From assembly GCA_026770705.1 (NCBI GenBank), contig JANJGN010000026.1, positions 29,264,001 through 29,328,000 of the forward strand: a DNA stretch of 64,000 nt. The letters run 5' to 3'. How positions within the stretch are numbered: the stretch's first letter is position 1; every line of letters starts with the position of its first letter. Shown here piece after piece: positions 23,434 through 56,233 of this stretch. This stretch comes from Isurus oxyrinchus (Eukaryota). A program made the position numbers and the translations under genes. The notes beneath the pieces are model-generated. The model was not told the DNA's origin. It did not search any database and saw only the letters and a program-made list of their open reading frames with translations.

Positions 23434-23571
23434 NNNNNNNNNNNNNNNNNNNNNNNNNNNNNNNNNNNNNNNNNNNNNNNNNNNNNNNNNNNNNNNNNNN
23501 NNNNNNNNNNNNNNNNNNNNNNNNNNNNNNNNNNNNNNNNNNNNNNNNNNNNNNNNNNNNNNNNNNNNNNN
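23434..23571. other. Assembly gap (138 N)
   Basis: Run of N. Contiguity and orientation across it are not guaranteed. Confidence 1.
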
Positions 23572-43790: not shown

Positions 43791-43846
43791 CAGCAATCCG
43801 GGAGCTGGTTTGTTCACTGAGTTCTGGACAGAACAGTTTCCCCCAA

Positions 43847-44377
43847 ATGGCCAGAAGGAAGAGGTCGGCGATTTTTCTCAGTTTGTTGCTGACTTTTCTT
43901 ATCCCGTGAGTAGTTTTTATTGCCCAAGTCTCTCACTGTTACTGTCTCAGTGCTAATCTTTCTCTCTGGAATTTTACAGAATCAGGAATCATTTCATCAG
44001 GATTAACCTGCGGGTTTTTGATATATTTTTACAGGTGTCCAGTCGGATGTTGTGTTCAGTCAGCCAGAGGCACAGACCGGGCGTTCCGGAGGCTCCCTGA
44101 GACTGACCTCTAAATCCAGCGGCTTCGATCTTGGCAGCTACTGGATGTTCTGGATCCGACAGGTTCCCGGACAGGGGCTGGAGTGGCTCCTTGATTACAA
44201 AACTTCATCCAGCAGCACTACGCCCCAGGAATTAAGAATTGATTTACTGCGTCCAAAGACACTTCAAGAAACATCTTCTCCTTGGACGTGACGAACCTGA
44301 AGACTGAAGACACCGCCATCTATTACTGTGCAAGATAAAACAGCGAGAGGAATCAGGGCTGGACTCGAACAAGAACA
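43847..44377 (+). pseudogene. IGHV: IgM VH pseudogene with leader and damaged 23-RSS
   Basis: Leader RSAIFLSLLLTFL (out of phase by 1 nt, donor at 43906). Exon from 44035: [51 protein letters not shown]...(frameshift)[38 protein letters not shown]; Cys23 to Ser. RSS AACAGCG (44339-44345)-23-ACAAGAACA. Confidence 0.95.
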
Positions 44378-44747
44378 GATCGGGAGGGACTCAACAACTT
44401 CCATCGTAACCTGACAGTCAGTACTTGTTTTAAATGTAATATTAACTTTAATGATCAGAACCAGAAAACAAGCCGCTTCTGACAAAAGTAAAACAGTAAA
44501 TTTAATAGTAAAACCTAACAAACCAACCGATATAATGGGCTGAGTTTTGGGCTGTGTTTATATTTAATGTAAATAGTTTCCTCAGTTACAGACCTGGATA
44601 TAATGTTAATTTTAATATGCCTAACACTTGGAGGGGATCTCTGTTCATTGAGTTTTGTAAGTTGTTTTTTCAATACTAAACTGCATCAGAAATAAACGTC
44701 TATTTGAAGTGAATATTGAGAGGCAGCACTGAACAGAGAGTGGGTGT

Positions 44748-44823
44748 AGTTTTTGTGCGGGTGTATTTCATTGTGCTCAGTGGGTGGCTGGATGTCACAG
44801 CTGTTACTGTCAATACAAAAACC
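44748..44823 (+). other. Single DH segment flanked by 12/12 RSS (probable joined D1-D2)
   Basis: AGTTTTTGT-12-CATTGTG | CTCAGTGGGTGGCTGGATGT (44776-44795) | CACAGCT-12-ACAAAAACC. Confidence 0.9.
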
Positions 44824-45153
44824 TCTCAGCATTAAATGAGTCTGCCTGGGTCAGTGCTGGCTTTTACAATCATGCTATATTTACAGTGAAGTATTTTTTT
44901 AATGTCCAGCACTGCCCACAAAACATGGTTTAAGATGAAAAAGCCGTGAAAAGTATTCATTCATCAGTTGGTGATTTCAGTAACATGTTCTTGTATTACT
45001 CTGTGAAATGTAAAACATGAGGGTCATTGATGAATAGCTAAAAATATCTACAACGCAATTATAATTTCGTGAAGATTCAGCGTGACTTTACTTTGCCTCT
45101 GACTTATGAATATTTAAAATAATGGTGGATCTCTGTCTTTTTCGTGCAGGGAC

Positions 45154-45240
45154 AGTTATTGTATGGCACAGCCCAGGGACTGTAACACTGTGACGCAAAG
45201 GACTACTGGGGACAAGGGACGGTGGTGACGGTGACTGCAG
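45154..45240 (+). CDS. IGHJ: JH segment with intact 23-RSS
   Basis: AGTTATTGT-23-CACTGTG (45186-45192); coding 45193-45240 AKDYWGQGTVVTVTA; GTAAG donor at 45241. Confidence 0.95.
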
Positions 45241-46419
45241 GTAAGAACCATGCACTTGTTTGGTAATTGTTTTAGTTGAGTCTTTGTTTTATATTTTTAT
45301 CTATTTTTATAAGTCATTCGTTCACTGAAATGTGGATTTGGTGGATTCTGTATTGAAATTTTTAAATAATGTTTCAAATGATTCTGCTGAAAAAGGTTTT
45401 TATAATTTGGCTGTTTCTCGACAAAAAAGTGCTGCTGAGGGATTCAGTCCCTGGTTGTTGTGATTTGGTGTTTATCTGCTGAAGATACTGTGCAGCAGGG
45501 CTACCTGAAATACCCAACGTTTGTTAAAACAGTTTGACGTTTCTGCGATGTTTAATCTCGGTGATATCTAATGGCTGTGGGTTTTACCGTCTACTGAACA
45601 ACGGTTTAAATATGTTTGAAATCAAACCCAATGTTAACAAAATATGCTTAAATTCCAATGTTAATTTAATGAACATGCTCCTCCTCACAATGTTGGTGCC
45701 ATTATTCCATATGTCTGTTTGGTTTAATTATTCATTCATTTGGTGACGAGCGAGTTGTCTGGATTCGATGTTGAGATTCTCTTGCAATGTTCCATTGGAT
45801 TCTGTTTCTGTTGGAAGTGCTTGTTCAATTGAGCTGCTTCTCCATAAAACGGGGTTCAGCCCCTCAGTGATATGATTTGGTGTTTTTCTGCTGAGGAGAT
45901 TGTGTGTCTGGGTGACTTTGAACAAGTAGAATTTATGAAACGGTTTGGCTGTTCTGCAGTGTTTCTGCTTTGTTTAACCTCGGTGACATTGAGCGGTTAC
46001 ACGTTTTGTGATTGAATGAAACAGCCTTCGCGTTTGTATCTGCTTGAAGTGCCATTGTCGGCAGAAAACAGAGGCTTCAGAAAAGGGGAAAAAACGTTTA
46101 AAGATGTGTTAGAACATCTTGTTTTTATTTTAAGTGATAATTGCAGATTAATCTAAACCATGGATCATTCAGAACATCATTCGTTACTGCAATCAGAAAC
46201 TACATAATTTACAAGTTTTCAAATTGTAGAGTAAAATTAATATAATTCCAGCAATTATAATGTGGTAAAATTTCTCCATATTGACGGAACAGCTTTTGTA
46301 TTAACATAATTGATCATCAATCTTTTTTTCTCAATTCTGCTGTGCACTGCGCACAATTAACATGATCGGAAAAGTTTTTAGGCTGGAAACAGTCACTCAC
46401 CATCAATTACTCGCTCAAA

Positions 46420-47559: not shown

Positions 47560-49150
47560 ATCCAGCCACGAGACACGGATTGGACAAGGCTGTAAGAAAG
47601 GAAAATAAGGACATGGACAGACAAGTTGGACAAATATTACTAAATAGCAAAGGCATTGGTTTCAATTCTCCAAACTTCCCTAGATTCTGGAAAGGTCTCA
47701 TCAGATTGAGAATGAGGATTTTATATTAAATAAAGGAGGGAAAGGGAAAGCAAGAAACTACAGGCCAATTAGCTTAACATCTGTTGGAGCGAAAATGCTG
47801 GAATCTATTATTATGGAATCCATCACGGGTCACTTAGAAAATCCAAATGCAATTATGTAGATCCATCATGGTTTTGTGAAAGGGAAATCATCTTTGGCTG
47901 ATTTATTTGAGGCCTTTCAAGGAAGTAACAAGGAACATGAATGAAGGAGAACCTGTGCATGTGCTGTCCTTGGGCTTCCAGAAGGCATTTGACAAAGTGG
48001 CACATCAAAGGTTACTGCACAAAATAGTGGTGTCAGCAGTAACATTTCAGCATGGGTAGAAGTTTGGTTAGCTATCAGGAAACAGAGAATATGGATGATA
48101 ACTTGGTTATTTTATGTTGGCAAGATGTGACAAGTGGAGTGCCACAGGGATCAGTGCTGCAGCATCAACTATTTACAATTTATATCAATGACTTGAATGA
48201 AAGGACTGAATGAATTTGCTAAATTTACTAACAACACAAAGATAGATAGGTAAGTAAGTGGTGAAGAGAGGATAAAGGTCAGCAAAGGGATATCGATAGG
48301 TTAAGTGAGTGGGCAAAAAAATGACAGATGGAGTATAATGTGGGAAAATATAAAATTGTCCACTTTGGCAGGAAGAATACAAAAGCAGCGTATTATTGAA
48401 AGGGAGAGACATTGCAGAACCCTGAGCTACAGAGGGACCTGGATCCCTTGGTGCATGAATCACAAAAAGTTACAACACAGGAACAGCAAGTGATGAGGAA
48501 GGCAAATGGAGTGTTGGCATTTATTACGAGGGGCATAGAATATAAATGGAAGGATATTTTGCTGCAGTATAACACGGTGTCGATGAGAACTCGTTTGAAT
48601 TATTGCATACAGATTTGGTCTCCTTTAAAAAAGGATTTAAAAGCATTAGAAACTGTTCAGAGAATTTTCATTCAAATGATACTGGGAGATGTCGTCGGTT
48701 ATCTTATGAGGAAAGTATGGATAGGCTGGGCCTGTATTCATTGGAGTTTAGAAGAATGAGAGATGATTTTATTGAAACGTATAGGATCCTGAGGGAAATT
48801 GACAGGGTGGATGCTGAAAGGATGTTTCCCCTTATGAAAGAGACTAACGATAGGGAACACAGTTTAAAAATAAGAGGTCTCCCATTTCAGACGGAAATGA
48901 AGGGATCTAATTTTTCTCTCAAAGGATCGTGCAACTTTGGAACTATCTTCCCCAGAGAGCGATGGAGGAGGAGTCATTAATATTTCAAGGCAGAGGTAGA
49001 GATTCTTCATTGACAAGGGAGTCAAAAGTTAGCGGAGATTAGGCGGGAACGTGGAGTTAACGCCACAATCAGATCAGCTATGATCGGAGTGAATGGTGGA
49101 GGAGGCTCGAGAGGCCGAATGGCCTACTCCTGCTACTGATCCGCATGTTC
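47560..49150 (+). mobile_element. CR1-clade LINE fragment in J-C intron
   Basis: Decayed RT (NYRPISLTS, FQKAFDKV, GVPQGSVL) to the C-terminus and 3' tail. Confidence 0.9.
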
Positions 49151-49814: not shown

Positions 49815-50114
49815 CGACACCGTCTTCGCCCAGTCTCTGCAGCCTGGTCTCCTCCTGTCAGCAACACAACACCGACGGCTCCGTCACCTACGGCTGTTTA
49901 GTGATGGACTACGCCCCAGAAATCACCAGCCTGACCTGGAAGAAAGATGGGCAGCCGATCACCACTGGATTTAAGACTTACCCGTCAGTGAGAAACCAAA
50001 AGGGAACCTACAGCCTGAGCAGCCAGTTCACCTTCCCCGAGTCAGAGGGAGAATGCAGCAAAATCAAGTGTGAGGTTCGACACAGCGGCTCAGACAAGAG
50101 CGTTGAAATGCAAT
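49815..50114 (+). CDS. IGHM: IgM CH1 exon (open frame)
   Basis: [59 protein letters not shown]...[18 protein letters not shown]; AG/GT intact. Confidence 0.93.
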
Positions 50115-50327
50115 GTAAGTGTTGGGGAACCTGTGAGAAACAGAAAGGTTGTGATTAACCTGTATAGGGCCTTGGTTATAACGCATTAATAGTGCTCTGC
50201 ATAGTTCTGATCCCTGGAAATTCCAGGTTAGTGTCTATTAACGGAAAAAGCCTGTTAAAATATACGAACCCATTGTATCTGTTATAAATTTCTTCTGCAA
50301 GAAATGTTTAACCTGTGTTTTTTGAAG

Positions 50328-50638
50328 ATCCTGAAACCTTCCCTCCAACTGTTCTCCTCACCATGAGTTCCCGGGAAGAAATCACAACCAACAAATTTGC
50401 AACCGCCGTCAGTTCAATCATCGATTTCCGTCCGAAGTCAATCACCGTAAAGTGGCTGAAGAATGGACAACCCATGGATTCAGGAATTGTCACCTCTCCC
50501 GCCTTTGAAGTGAACGGGAACTTCTCGGCGACCAGTCGCTGAAAGTCTCCGCTGCGTATTGGTTCACCGACTCGGTCTCTACCTGTCAGGTCACTCACCA
50601 AGGGGTCACCCAAAGTCGAAACGCCACCAAGTGTGGGG
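50328..50638 (+). pseudogene. IGHM: IgM CH2 exon (disabled)
   Basis: [11 protein letters not shown]...[23 protein letters not shown]...FSATSR, then a 1-nt frameshift near 50538; first Cys to Ser. Confidence 0.92.
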
Positions 50639-51046: not shown

Positions 51047-51354
51047 AACATTCCCAGTGCAGCGATCCCACAATTACTCTACTGTCACCGTTAATAGAAC
51101 AGGTCTTACTGTAGGCGACGGTGACATTAACCTGCATCGTTTCTAATGCCCTTATGGAGTCCTTGTGTTCTGGACCCAAGAAAAGAAGCCTTTGAAATCA
51201 GAGGTTGCTGTCCAACCGAGAGAGGATCACAACAGCGTGGTCAGCAACGTAAACATCTCGACACAAGCCTGGCTGAGTGGGGCTGAGTTCTACTGCGTGG
51301 TGAACCATCAGGATCTGCCGACTCCTTTAAGAAGTTCCTTCCACAAGGAACGAG
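51047..51354 (+). pseudogene. IGHM: IgM CH3 exon (disabled)
   Basis: TAG at 51112-51114 and a 1-nt deletion near 51150; remainder reads WTQEKKPL...[20 protein letters not shown]. Confidence 0.92.
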
Positions 51355-52062
51355 GTGAGCGGTGAGATTGAAGCAATAAGTGAGTCATTGTGTCTATTTC
51401 CAGTGTAAGGGTCAATATTTAATATTGAGTGCATTAAGGTCCACTCCGATTGGTATTTCCAAAACCTAAACCCTCTGGGCCTGTAGACTTCAGGGGGAAA
51501 TTGATAAGTAGATGAATGAACAATGAATTGAAAGCTGTGCTACTGGGTTTAGATGAAGCAAGGTGGGAGGAGCCTGGTGTGGAGCTTAAACACCAACACA
51601 GACCAGTTGGGCCGAATGGCCTGTTTCTGTGCTGTAAACTTTGAAAAACTTTCTCGTCCAACCCCATAGGTTCTTAATGAAAATGATTGTGTCCATCTCT
51701 GCTCCGATGTGGAAAACTGGACAGATCCCAAAGTGCTTTATTAATTAATTCATGGGATGTGGGCGTCACTGGCTCAGCCAGCGTTTATGGCCCATCCCTA
51801 ATATCCATTGAGAAGGGGGTGATGAGCTGCCTTCTTGAACCGCTACAGTCTATCTGGTGTGGGCACACCGACAGTGCTGTTAGGGAGGGAGTTCCAGGGT
51901 TTTGGCTCAGCAATAGTGAAGGAACGGTGCTATATTTCCGAGAAGTAGATAATGTAAACCTTTTATATTCATCACAAAACACATTTCTCTCACATTCAAC
52001 CAGCCGTTTCATTATCTCCGAAATTCTCCAGTTTATTGACATTTATTGTACATTTTCTGCAG

Positions 52063-52454
52063 TTAAAAATCCACGGGAACCGTCCGTGTCTGTCCTCCTG
52101 CCCTCGGCAGAAGATGTCTCCACTCAGAGGTTCGTCTCCCTCAACTGCTTAGTGAGAGGTTTCTCCCCGCGAGAGATCTTCGTCAAGTGGACTGTCAATG
52201 ACAGGCCGGTGAATCCCGGGAACTACAAGAACACTGAGGTGTTGGCGGAGAACGGCAATAGCTCCTTCTTCATGTACAGCCTGTTATCCATTGCAGCGGA
52301 GGAGTGGGCCAGCGGCGCTTCTTACTCCTGTGTGGTGGGACATGAAGCGATCCCCTTGAAGATCATCAATAGAACTGTTGATAAATCCAGCGGTGAACCG
52401 AATTTTGTGAACATTTCCCTTGCACTGATGGACACCGTTAATTTATGTCAATAA
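52063..52454 (+). CDS. IGHM: IgM CH4 exon plus secretory tail (open frame)
   Basis: [14 protein letters not shown]...[18 protein letters not shown]...[43 protein letters not shown]; AATAAA at 52482-52487. Confidence 0.95.
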
Positions 52455-52914
52455 GAATCTCTCGGTTACATTTCAAACTTCAATAAACAAATCATAAAGT
52501 CCATTTCTCCAATCATTATTTAAATTCACAATTGCTTAGTTAATGTTGTTTTCCAATTTTGCTAATGCTAGACCTGTTCAGTTAAAATCAGATATTTACA
52601 CGACTCACACCCAAGTGTTGTACACCCAGTGCTCGCAGCTCAGATACACCCTGGGATAGAGAGAGAGTAAAGCTCATTCATTACAGGATTCTGCAAAATA
52701 ACTTCACCAGCTCTCCTCCCGCTGAGGAGAAATCTGACAATTTCTGTTTCCGACAAACAAACACAGCGCATTTAGATCTCAGTGTTCCTGCTTCTCTTGT
52801 CGTCCATCCCTTTAAAATGGATGTCAGCTTTATGCTGCTGCATCACACCCACTGGGAACCGAAGTGAGGGTCACACACAAACATGTCCCAACAACTCCCC
52901 AGGAGAGAGAGTGG

Positions 52915-53410
52915 AAAGGGAAATTGTTAGCCCACTGTACCCCCACTTCCCCAACAGGGAGAGGGAAAGGGAAATTGTTAACCCACTGTACCCCCACTTC
53001 CCCAACAGGGAGAGGGAAAGGGAAATTGTTAACCCACTGTACCCCCATTTCCCCAACAGAGAGAGGGAAAGGGAAATTGTTAACCCACTGTACCCCCATT
53101 TCCCCAACAGAGAGAGGGGAAGGGAAATTGTTAGCCCACTGTACCCCCACTTCCCCAACAGGGAGAGGGGAAAGGGAAATTGTTAACTCACTGTACCCCA
53201 CTTTACCAACAAAGGGTGGGGGGAATTTTCAGCCACTGTACGCCCACTTCCCCAACAGAGAAAACTGAAAGGAAAATTGTTGTCCAATTTTACCTCCACT
53301 TGCTTAACAAAAAGACGAGGAAGGTCATTCGTTATCCCACTGTGTCTCCACCTTCTCAGCAGACAAAACCGAAAGGGAAATTGCTTAGCCGACCACAGGG
53401 AGGGAAGCTA
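52915..53410 (+). repeat. 51-bp minisatellite
   Basis: Unit GGGAAATTGTTAACCCACTGTACCCCCACTTCCCCAACAGGGAGAGGGAAA; ~5 near-identical copies, then degenerate ones. Confidence 0.92.
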
Positions 53411-53859
53411 TTAACTCACTGGACTCTCAGTCCCTGAGCAGAGAATCTGGAAGGGAACAGGCCTCCACTGTAAGGACCCAGTTGCCAATAGCACACGTCA
53501 GCTTCCAGCTTACTGGCCACAGGCCTTATCTTCCAACATGCTGAAAATGTAAAATATATATTTATGCAGCGTTTTAAAAAAAGTTTTAACACTCTTGTTC
53601 CTATTGACCTGATGCTAACATTGGTTTCTTATAATCCGAATCGAAACTGGTGACTGAATCCTCCCTGCGTTTTTCATGGTTCTTCTCTGAATTTGAGAGG
53701 CGTGCCGTTGAATTTTTGCATTCATTCACCTGATATCACCTTGCATCACACAGAAAACACGCTTATATACAGAACATTGAAAATATTCACTAAAAGTTTC
53801 ACCGTCAGGGTCAGACTCGATCATTGCTACCTGATGAAACTTGGAAAAATAATAATAAT

Positions 53860-54960
53860 ACACAAATGACACAAATGGATACACACACATACCTTGGCAC
53901 AGCCACTCACTCACAGATACCTAGGCACAGACATGCACACACACAGGCACAGGTACACACACAGGCACGCACCCACACACTCACATGCACCCATACACAC
54001 AAACACACACACACAAACACGCACAGGCACACTCACATACACACACAATCACACACACACACACACACACAAATATATGGGCACAGACGCACAAACACAC
54101 AGGCACACATACATGCACACAATCACACACGCCCACACATACACAATCACAGACATGCAAATACACACGCAGACACATCCACACATAAACACAATTACAC
54201 ACACAAATGCACACACACACAAACTCACACACAAATACACAATCACACACACAGATAAAACCAGACAAGCCGACTCATACAAGGTCATAAAGCACAAATG
54301 TAATTATTAGCACATACATTATCACACGTTCATAATGACAGAAATACAGACATAAAGACACACACTGTCAACCACATTAAAACAAATGCATGGGCACACC
54401 TTAGCACATGCACACACATGAGCAGACGAGACCCAGACACACAAACACAGAAGAACAAAATATCACATTAACAGACACACATGTCGATACAAACATACTC
54501 ATACACACGAGAACACAAAAAGCACATGTTAGTACATATGAAAACATAAACACACATTGATACATTGTTCTTAATATCCATCAAGACACAAATGCACACA
54601 TTAAACTCTCTCTCTCACACATACACACACACACGCCGTGACACAGACATTAATATACTGACAAACACGTAGAACACAAAAAGAAACATTAACGCTCATA
54701 TTAGCAGAGAATGACGCATAAACACACAGTCACACAGATAGCTATAAATGAATATAGACATCAACACATAAGCACATACAGTAACACACTTAAAATACAC
54801 ATTAGCAGAAAAACAAAATATACATACAGACCCAGACACTCAGATACACAAATCAGCACACATTGGCATATAAACACACACATTAACACTCATACACACG
54901 TATGGACACACAAACAGAGAGTAATGCAAAACACAAGATACTCTGCACACATACATAACA
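53860..54960 (+). repeat. (CA)n-rich low-complexity tract
   Basis: Long imperfect CA/ACAC run; source of the His/Thr-rich and Cys/Val-rich ORFs. Confidence 0.9.
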
Positions 54961-55037
54961 ACTAAAGAACAACACAGACGCCATGGAATTGAAGAAATTA
55001 TAATTCAAATGTACTTTTTTAACGGGCATATTCTCCA

Positions 55038-55470: not shown

Positions 55471-55959
55471 AAATATTCTCCGGCAATTGCCTCGATTACA
55501 TAATGACCAGATAAACACACTGAAACAATATTCTTACTGAGAAACTGATTTAAGTTAATGACGCACCAAACATTCCCATCACAAATAGACAAGCAAGATG
55601 GGAAATCACATCCGAGCTTTTAAAAAGCAACGTTAACTATTTCCAAATAAGTAGCTCAGTGAATCTCTCTCAATATCCATCATAATAATCTCCAATAATA
55701 GATCATACGAAATTGTTCGAAAACAAACTGATGCTGAAGAAAAGTTGCCACATTTTCCGACTTGGGCTGTACGAGGAATGGAAAGGAGAGATAGTCACAG
55801 AGATAGGTTACTGAGATTCACGAACTTAACAGTACATATACATTGAACATTAAATTAGAGAATACATTAATAATTTAGGAAAGAGTAAAGAGAATATTGA
55901 AAAAGATATCCAAGATTGATAAACAATCTAATTGTATTTTCTCGGCTATATCCTCGTAG

Positions 55960-56233
55960 ATACCAATGGTGGCATCTGGATTGAAGACTCTGAGGATGAT
56001 AACGGCAACATCTGGACAACCGCTTCCACTTTCATCATCCTGTTCTTCCTGAGCATTTTCTACAGCGCTGCCGTCACTCTGGTGAAGGTGAGAAGATTCA
56101 ATCCATTCACACTTCAAACTGACGAAGCAGTTTGAAAAATCTCTCAATGTTTCATTGATTAAAACTCTAACATAAATGTCCCAGATCATAAACATCTGCT
56201 TCATTATTTTATCCTTTTTTTCAGATCAAGTGA
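55960..56233 (+). CDS. IGHM: IgM transmembrane exons TM1 (55960-56087) and TM2 (56225-56233)
   Basis: DTNGGIWIEDSEDDNGNIWTTASTFIILFFLSIFYSAAVTLVK + IK*; canonical splice sites; AATAAA at 56657 and 56693. Confidence 0.93.

What the first reader, a model, noticed from the sequence alone, without database searches (positions are those of the whole stretch)
44339..45192. Germline-joined D1-D2 with V and J still unrearranged (V-DD-J): fossil of RAG activity in the germ line
Seen: only one D between VH and JH, 20 nt long, with 12-RSS on both sides. V-D and D-J distances are ~440 and ~400 nt, and I find no second D or internal 22/23-RSS. Known: shark IgM clusters are normally V-23/12-D1-22or23/12-D2-12/23-J, and germline-joined VDD-J and VDDJ clusters exist. 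A D1-D2 coding joint would leave exactly a 12/12 element. The core reads CAGTGGGT + G + GCTGGATG, matching my recollection of shark D1 (..CAGTGGGT) and D2 (..CTGGAT..) cores (to be verified). Inference: germ-cell RAG fused the Ds, converting a two-D cluster into a tetrapod-like single 12/12 D cluster.
Basis: partly seen in the sequence, partly recalled or inferred. Interest (0 to 1): 0.82.

Follow-up and report, generated by a model that had tools for sequence, protein, structure and literature searches.

The report
Pre-fused D segment, dead shark IgM cluster
This is a broken shark IgM antibody gene cluster whose two diversity (D) pieces were joined into one in the inherited genome, most likely by the RAG recombinase. 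It is one more layout of the "germline-joined" shark antibody genes known since the 1980s, so it is a modest finding.

Summary
Between the VH (coding end 44338) and the JH (coding start 45193) there is one 20-nt D (44776-44795). It has a 12-spacer RSS on each side, lies 437 nt from V and 397 nt from J, and no second D or 22/23-spacer RSS is present.

Contigs of related IgM clusters from four public runs (two coded organisms) lose homology to the window inside the D:
- One set matches the 5' flank up to the heptamer and continues as an unjoined D1 (ATACTACAGCAGTGGGT, then CAC).
- The other set carries a D2 (heptamer CACTGTG, then ATATA) and matches the window from CTGGATGT through the 3' RSS into the D-J interval.

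The window's D therefore reads CT + CAGTGGGT (untrimmed D1 3' end) + GG + CTGGATGT (D2 minus 5 nt). That is the signature of a RAG coding joint.

Caveats:
- The cluster is dead, with lesions in V, its RSS heptamer, Cmu2 and Cmu3.
- No independent read was shown to span the joint.
- The comparison contigs are short pieces from relatives.

Earlier notes of this scan report the same V-DD-J layout at two other places in this genome. D1-D2 germline fusion is already known for nurse-shark IgNAR type III. Interest is low to moderate.

The parts
43847..43907 (+). Leader exon of the VH (ATG at 43847), followed by the leader intron
   Evidence: Sequence read. Exon 2 begins at about 44034 after the acceptor ...tttttacag.
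44034..44338 (+). VH exon 2, IgM-type, pseudogene. Cys23 codon is TCT instead of TGT (44110), there is a 1-nt deletion near 44216, and an in-frame TGA replaces the Arg of the ..GRFT.. motif.
   Evidence: Three-frame translation. tblastn with P0018 splits the V into two frames with a stop. Related contigs read G at 44110 and carry one extra base at 44216/44217 (tables 3 and 4).
44339..44377 (+). VH 23-spacer RSS with a damaged heptamer (AACAGCG; first C lost) and nonamer ACAAGAACA
   Evidence: Related contigs read C at 44339, giving CACAG.. (table 3).
44748..44775 (+). 5' 12-spacer RSS of the D: AGTTTTTGT, 12 nt, CATTGTG
   Evidence: heptamer 6/7, nonamer 8/9.
44776..44795 (+). Fused D (DD), 20 nt: CT, then CAGTGGGT (44778-44785, D1 3' end), GG (44786-44787, untemplated or variant) and CTGGATGT (44788-44795, D2 3' part). 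Open in all three forward frames.
   Evidence: table 7: loose end behind 44775 reads ATACTACAGCAGTGGGTCAC; loose end before 44788 reads ..CACTGTGATATA. Reading frames.
44796..44823 (+). 3' 12-spacer RSS of the D: CACAGCT, 12 nt, ACAAAAACC. Among the differences shown, related D2 contigs read the same here.
   Evidence: Contigs aligned from 44788 onward show no listed difference before 44824 among the rows shown; 347 more rows were hidden (tables 3 and 8).
45154..45192 (+). JH 23-spacer RSS: AGTTATTGT, 23 nt, CACTGTG
45193..45240 (+). JH coding segment (..DYWGQGTVVTVTA), with splice donor GT at 45241
49835..50122 (+). Cmu1 exon (approximate limits), open
   Evidence: ORF; tblastn.
50324..50630 (+). 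Cmu2 exon, broken: the domain cysteine is replaced (AVSSIIDF) and there is a frameshift/stop near 50539
   Evidence: tblastn.
51055..51356 (+). Cmu3 exon, broken: stop in EQVLL*ATVTLTC and a frameshift at 51150
   Evidence: tblastn.
52068..52454 (+). Cmu4 exon with secretory tail, open. It is 89-91% identical to unnamed shark IgM fragments, 73% to Chiloscyllium punctatum and about 60% to Callorhinchus.
55950..56110 (+). TM1 exon (..NIWTTASTFIILFFLSIFYSAAVTLVKV), approximate limits
   Evidence: Motif search.

Best explanation
An ordinary shark IgM mini-locus, V(23)-(12)D1(22/23)-(12)D2(12)-(23)J-Cmu, underwent one V(D)J-type recombination in the germ line. RAG cut at the 3' RSS of D1 and the 5' RSS of D2. 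The roughly 400-nt interval with both signals was lost, and the two coding ends were joined with minor processing: D1 end untrimmed, 2 extra nt, D2 trimmed by 5 nt. The result is V(23)-(12)DD(12)-(23)J.

What is shown:
- the layout;
- the absence of the two consumed RSSs;
- the D1/D2 composite make-up of the D;
- the break of homology inside the D.

What is inferred:
- that RAG made the join;
- that it happened in germ cells;
- the order of the join relative to the decay of the cluster.

The cluster is now a pseudogene: V has three lesions and a damaged heptamer, and Cmu2 and Cmu3 are broken. The fused D therefore has no present function in this copy.
For: - One 20-nt D with 12-RSSs on both sides, and no other RSS between V and J.
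- Related contigs in four runs of two coded organisms give an unjoined D1 (ATACTACAGCAGTGGGT + CAC) after the 5' flank, and an unjoined D2 (CACTGTG + ATATACTGGATGT + CACAGCT...) before the 3' flank. The homology breaks fall at 44775/44776 and 44788 (tables 7 and 8).
- The 8-nt D1 tail and the 8-nt D2 tail both sit in the window's D. The chance of an exact 8-mer at a fixed place is 1.5e-5.
- The V-D gap of 437 nt and the D-J gap of 397 nt match one interval each, with about one interval missing.
- V-DD-J is a real product of shark RAG: it is a somatic intermediate at nurse-shark IgM loci (PMC2435157).
- The criteria used for germ-cell RAG joins are met: RSSs fully excised, small deletions, little N addition (PMC2193156).
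- Other germline-joined forms of the same gene family (VDJ, and DJ or DDJ) occur with identical junctions in both organisms (tables 5 and 5c). Germline joining is therefore common in this lineage.
Against: - No contig shown spans the joint, and the runs hold under 0.2 of the stretch's words. They are probably relatives or paralogues, so the joint rests on the assembly alone.
- The D1 part of the window (CT + CAGTGGGT) is 7 nt shorter at its 5' side than the D1 seen in relatives. This is unexplained; it could be a different D1 subtype or a later deletion.
- The D1 loose end was listed for one run only (X5, 2 contigs).
- Contigs of DJ-joined relatives also align to the window's 5' flank (44685-44776). 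D1 and D2 5' flanks may therefore resemble each other, and the assignment of the 5' flank to V-D1 is not proven along its whole length.
- The GG at the joint is not a P addition and would need TdT or a variant D.
Confidence: 0.78

Rival explanations
1. A deletion not made by RAG (replication slippage, end-joining after a random break, or unequal crossing-over between D1 and D2 regions) removed the D1-D2 interval.
For: The cluster is a decaying pseudogene that has collected other small indels. The D1 part is also shortened at its 5' side. The 5' RSSs of D1 and D2 look alike (14 of 21 positions, my comparison of the loose end), which could favour unequal exchange.
Against: Both breakpoints fall within 0-5 nt of the heptamer borders, and both RSSs are removed cleanly. 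Two random breakpoints in about 400 nt would do this at roughly 2e-4 (my estimate). Unequal exchange between the two 5' RSSs would leave a pure D2, yet the D1 tail CAGTGGGT is present.
Confidence: 0.08
2. The join is not germline. It is an assembly collapse, or a somatic V-DD-J rearrangement from lymphocytes in the sequenced tissue.
For: No independent read across the joint was shown. V-DD-J intermediates are frequent in shark thymocytes (PMC2435157). IgM clusters are multi-copy, with many related contigs per position.
Against: A somatic product of one locus would be a small minority of molecules and would not form the consensus. The V RSS heptamer is damaged and the cluster is dead, so it is a poor RAG target today. 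D1 and D2 share no repeat long enough to cause a collapse at this joint. Earlier scan notes, not checked here, report the same layout at two other loci of the same assembly.
Confidence: 0.06
3. An original single-D cluster: the 12/12 D is ancestral in this cluster lineage and was never two segments.
For: The layout equals the tetrapod and bony-fish V(23)-(12)D(12)-(23)J arrangement. Two other single-D IgM clusters are noted in this genome.
Against: The D is a composite of the D1 tail and the D2 tail found as separate segments in related clusters, whose flanks are homologous to the window's flanks. At 20 nt it is longer than either D1 (17 nt) or D2 (13 nt) alone.
Confidence: 0.03

Closest known systems
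Germline-joined IgH clusters of cartilaginous fishes (VD-J, VD-DJ, VDJ; horned shark, skates, nurse-shark IgM1gj)
   Same: Same isotype, and the same cluster organisation. The inferred mechanism is also the same: RAG acting in germ cells on an open cluster, with the RSSs excised and small processing at the joint (PMC5192425; PMC2193156).
   Different: Here only D1-D2 is joined, while V and J keep their RSSs. The open-access texts I searched list VD-J, VD-DJ and VDJ for IgM, but not V-DD-J as a germline form. Many subscription papers were not searchable.
Nurse-shark IgNAR type III cluster (germline D1-D2 fusion)
   Same: A D-D germline fusion with V and J still unjoined, which removes one rearrangement step and restricts CDR3 diversity (PMC4622739).
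   Different: It is a different isotype (IgNAR, three Ds, so V-D1D2-D3-J). It is expressed and functional in neonates, whereas the window's cluster is IgM by its Cmu exons and is dead.
Somatic V-DD-J intermediates at nurse-shark IgM loci
   Same: The same product of D1-to-D2 joining as a first, order-free step of rearrangement (PMC2435157).
   Different: Those arise in individual lymphocytes or thymocytes. Here the joint is in the assembled genome, inside a cluster that has since accumulated inactivating mutations.
Tetrapod and bony-fish IgH D segments (12-RSS on both sides)
   Same: The same signal layout, V(23)-(12)D(12)-(23)J (legend quoted from PMC2435157).
   Different: This is a resemblance of layout only. 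It was reached secondarily by fusion within a mini-cluster, and there is no translocon array of Ds.

Membership tests
Germline-joined cartilaginous-fish Ig cluster (RAG product in the germ line) | Lies in an Ig mini-cluster (leader-V, D, J, C exons in one orientation) | tested here: met
   V 43847-44338, D 44776-44795, J 45193-45240, Cmu1-4 49.8-52.5 kb, TM1 at about 56.0 kb.
Germline-joined cartilaginous-fish Ig cluster (RAG product in the germ line) | The two RSSs that the join would consume, and the DNA between them, are completely absent | tested here: met
   An RSS scan of both strands finds no 22/23-RSS and no extra 12-RSS between V and J.
Germline-joined cartilaginous-fish Ig cluster (RAG product in the germ line) | The junction lies at the coding ends of the split segments, with only small trimming or addition | tested here: met
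   The D1 tail CAGTGGGT is untrimmed, followed by GG, then D2 lacking its first 5 nt. Split D1 and D2 were read from related contigs (table 7).
Germline-joined cartilaginous-fish Ig cluster (RAG product in the germ line) | Flanks are homologous to the V-D1 and D2-J intervals of split clusters | tested here: inconclusive
   3' flank: contigs carrying a split D2 align 44788-44978 and further pieces reach J (table 8). 5' flank: contigs align all along 44340-44775 and some run on into D1. They are short unitigs, however, and DJ-joined relatives also align to 44685-44776.
Germline-joined cartilaginous-fish Ig cluster (RAG product in the germ line) | Present in non-lymphoid or germ-cell DNA and in several individuals | tested here: inconclusive
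   The runs hold under 0.2 of the words. No listed contig spans the joint. A 98%-identical copy of the pseudo-V, with the same Cys loss and frameshift, exists in organism B (record 15), which suggests the dead cluster is inherited. The D itself was not seen.
Canonical shark IgM cluster V-D1-D2-J | Two D segments, D1 with 12/22-23 RSSs and D2 with 12/12 RSSs | tested here: not met
   Only one D is present, with 12/12 RSSs.
IgNAR type III (D1-D2 fused) | IgNAR V and C exons, with a third D | tested here: not met
   The C exons are Cmu-type with an IgM secretory tail. There is a single D.

The most novel reading that the evidence does not exclude
The V-DD-J clusters of this genome (this one, plus two noted 1.1 and 1.9 Mb upstream, one of them intact) may descend from one joined ancestor that then duplicated. 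That would make them a stable single-D IgM lineage in a shark, a living example of how a 12/12 single-D heavy-chain layout can arise from the two-D cluster. Alternatively, the still RSS-competent DD and J next to TCR-type V segments might take part in Ig/TCR trans-rearrangement.
Probability: 0.1. Interest if true: 0.55.

Novelty: new variant of a known kind. Interest (0 to 1): 0.3.

Why it matters
It adds one layout (V-DD-J at an IgM locus) to the catalogue of germline-joined shark antibody genes. It also gives a cleanly readable junction, with D1 tail, 2 nt and D2 tail, which supports RAG activity in germ cells, an idea already accepted since 2000.

Because this copy is a pseudogene, it has no bearing on the animal's repertoire. 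Its value is as a dated fossil for reconstructing how often, and in what order, germline joins happened in the catshark IgM family.

Tried and rejected
- **Self-comparison of the window** for a second IgM cluster to align against: none found.
- **Word search with the open part of the V exon:** no candidates.
- **Exact-pattern scans** for a split D2 and for the conserved VH 3' end in metagenome contigs and in genome contigs: blank, as expected for collections without shark DNA.
- **Look-up of earlier findings by sequence:** blank, which per the operators means nothing.
- **Full-text search for the D1/D2 cores as strings:** only unrelated hits.
- **Hinds-Frey 1993** (horned-shark D sequences): only the abstract and references are held.
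- **Spliced model:** Exons were searched one by one by reference, and the joined step was left out.

Readings considered and rejected:
- D2 alone with D1 deleted. The D1 tail is present.
- An ancestral single D. The D has a composite make-up.

Full report
**What is there**

The stretch lies in a single Ig heavy-chain mini-cluster on the + strand. Its parts are:
- a leader exon (ATG at 43847);
- VH exon 2 (44034-44338);
- one D (44776-44795);
- a JH (45193-45240);
- Cmu1 to Cmu4 (about 49.8-52.5 kb);
- a TM exon near 56.0 kb.

The window holds no second cluster.

| Element | Signal |
|---|---|
| V RSS | AACAGCG, 23 nt, ACAAGAACA |
| D 5' RSS | AGTTTTTGT, 12 nt, CATTGTG |
| D 3' RSS | CACAGCT, 12 nt, ACAAAAACC |
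| J RSS | AGTTATTGT, 23 nt, CACTGTG |

The D coding sequence is CTCAGTGGGTGGCTGGATGT. The V-D gap is 437 nt and the D-J gap 397 nt.

A scan for heptamer/nonamer pairs with 11-13 or 21-24 nt spacers on both strands of 43800-45400 found only the D and J signals between V and J. Shuffled sequence gave a mean of 0.49 hits.

**State of the cluster**

- **V exon:** TCT stands in place of the Cys23 codon, there is a 1-nt deletion near 44216, and an in-frame TGA falls in the ..GRFT.. motif.
- **V RSS heptamer:** it has lost its first C. Related contigs read C there, read G at 44110, and carry the missing base (tables 3 and 4).
- **Cmu2:** the domain cysteine is lost and there is a frameshift.
- **Cmu3:** it carries a stop and a frameshift.
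- **Open exons:** Cmu1, Cmu4 with the secretory tail, and TM1.

Cmu4 is 89-91% identical to unnamed shark IgM fragments, 73% to Chiloscyllium punctatum and about 60% to Callorhinchus. Earlier notes of this scan call the genome a catshark. I could not verify the species.

**Test of the D1-D2 reading**

The proper test is alignment with unjoined clusters. Scans of metagenome and prokaryote-genome contigs were blank.

I therefore laid Logan contigs of four public runs on 43800-45400 at 80% likeness. Three runs were of coded organism A and one of organism B. Many short contigs of related IgM clusters align along both intervals. Homology to the window ends at two places inside the D:
- Contigs that match up to 44775, the last base of the 5' heptamer, go on with ATACTACAGCAGTGGGTCAC. 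That is a separate D1 of 17 nt followed by the start of a heptamer.
- Contigs that begin with ..GACATGGTGTCTCT CACTGTG ATATA match the window from 44788 (CTGGATGT) through the 3' heptamer, spacer and nonamer to about 44978. That is a separate D2, ATATACTGGATGT, with its own 5' 12-RSS heptamer. This form was seen in all four runs.

The window's D is thus CT + CAGTGGGT (the last 8 nt of D1, untrimmed) + GG + CTGGATGT (D2 without its first 5 nt).

Two features are exactly what Lee et al. used to infer RAG-mediated joining in shark germ cells (PMC2193156). Both consumed RSSs and the interval between them are gone, and both breakpoints lie within 0-5 nt of the heptamer borders. D1-to-D2 joining as a first step is a documented activity of shark RAG: V-DD-J is a common somatic intermediate at nurse-shark IgM loci (PMC2435157).

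**Limits of the evidence**
- The runs hold less than 0.2 of the stretch's sampled words. They are probably relatives or paralogues rather than the window's own sample.
- None of the pieces listed spans the joint, so the join itself rests on the assembly.
- The D1 loose end was listed for one run only (X5).
- The window's D1 part is 7 nt shorter at its 5' side than that D1. This is unexplained.
- Contigs of DJ-joined (or DDJ-joined) relatives also align to 44685-44776. The assignment of the whole 5' flank to a V-D1 interval is therefore likely (it is contiguous with the V and of normal length) but not proven.
- One contig of organism B is 98% identical to the pseudo-V (X20 record 15, 44066-44268) and shares its Cys loss and frameshift. 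This suggests the dead cluster is inherited and older than one individual. It does not show the D.

**Rivals**
- **Deletion not made by RAG:** it would have to hit both RSS borders by chance. Unequal exchange between the two 5' RSSs would leave a pure D2, which is not what is seen.
- **Somatic product or assembly collapse:** unlikely for a consensus assembly of a locus with a damaged V heptamer. It was not excluded by reads.
- **Ancestral single D:** contradicted by the composite make-up of the D.

**Comparison with what is known**

Germline-joined IgH clusters (VD-J, VD-DJ, VDJ) have been known in cartilaginous fishes since the 1980s (PMC5192425; PMC2193156). A germline D1-D2 fusion with V and J unjoined is known for nurse-shark IgNAR type III (PMC4622739).

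In the open texts I could search, V-DD-J at an IgM locus appears only as a somatic intermediate. The germline IgM form may therefore be an undescribed layout. It needs no new mechanism.

Earlier notes of this scan report the same layout at two other places of this genome: s1-871175, an intact cluster with a 25-nt DD, and s1-868742. They also report DJ-joined clusters. independently shows VDJ-joined and DJ- or DDJ-joined relatives whose junctions are identical in organisms A and B. Germline joining is evidently common in this lineage, and this instance is one more, in a pseudogene.

**Verdict**

Novelty is minor (a new variant of a known kind) and interest is about 0.3.

Noticed in passing
window 2245 (+), 3275 (-), 5531 (-), 10201 (-): V-segment ends of TCR type (..YFCAM.., ..YYCAL..) with 23/24-spacer RSSs lie 34-42 kb upstream of the IgM pseudo-cluster. 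An Ig cluster thus sits next to TCR V segments, as in the linked Ig/TCR-alpha-delta region described in PMC12227049.
   Followed up: partly
joint 44329 to 45204 on window coordinates (contigs of runs X1 and X20): A related, fully VDJ-joined gene has the same 33-nt junction (TCATGGCAGCCTAATGCATACTGGGGTGGCGAA) in coded organisms A and B. This is a germline-joined IgM gene shared by two organisms (tables 5 and 5c).
   Followed up: no
joints 44770/44776/44778 to 45200/45201 (contigs of X1, X2, X5, X20): Related clusters have a 12-RSS followed directly by an 18-23-nt D-like stretch fused to J (DJ- or DDJ-joined). Their junctions are shared between runs and between organisms (table 5c).
   Followed up: no
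window 50324-50630 and 51055-51356: Cmu2 (cysteine loss, frameshift) and Cmu3 (stop, frameshift) are broken, while Cmu1, Cmu4 with the secretory tail and TM1 remain open.
   Followed up: partly
window 48412-48980 (+): ORFs in the J-Cmu1 intron look like the C-terminal part of a retrotransposon reverse transcriptase (..LEFRRMRDDFIETYRIL..). This is probably a LINE fragment.
   Followed up: no
window 52780-53440 and 53820-54970: Downstream of Cmu4 there is a tandem repeat with a period of roughly 69-72 nt (repeated peptide ..PLYPHFPNREREREIVN..), followed by a long CA-rich simple repeat.
   Followed up: no
window 43934-43952: RSS-like heptamer/nonamer pairs occur inside the leader intron of the V, in both orientations. 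Their scores are near chance level.
   Followed up: no
window 23434-23571: A run of 138 N (assembly gap or masked stretch). It was left untouched.
   Followed up: no
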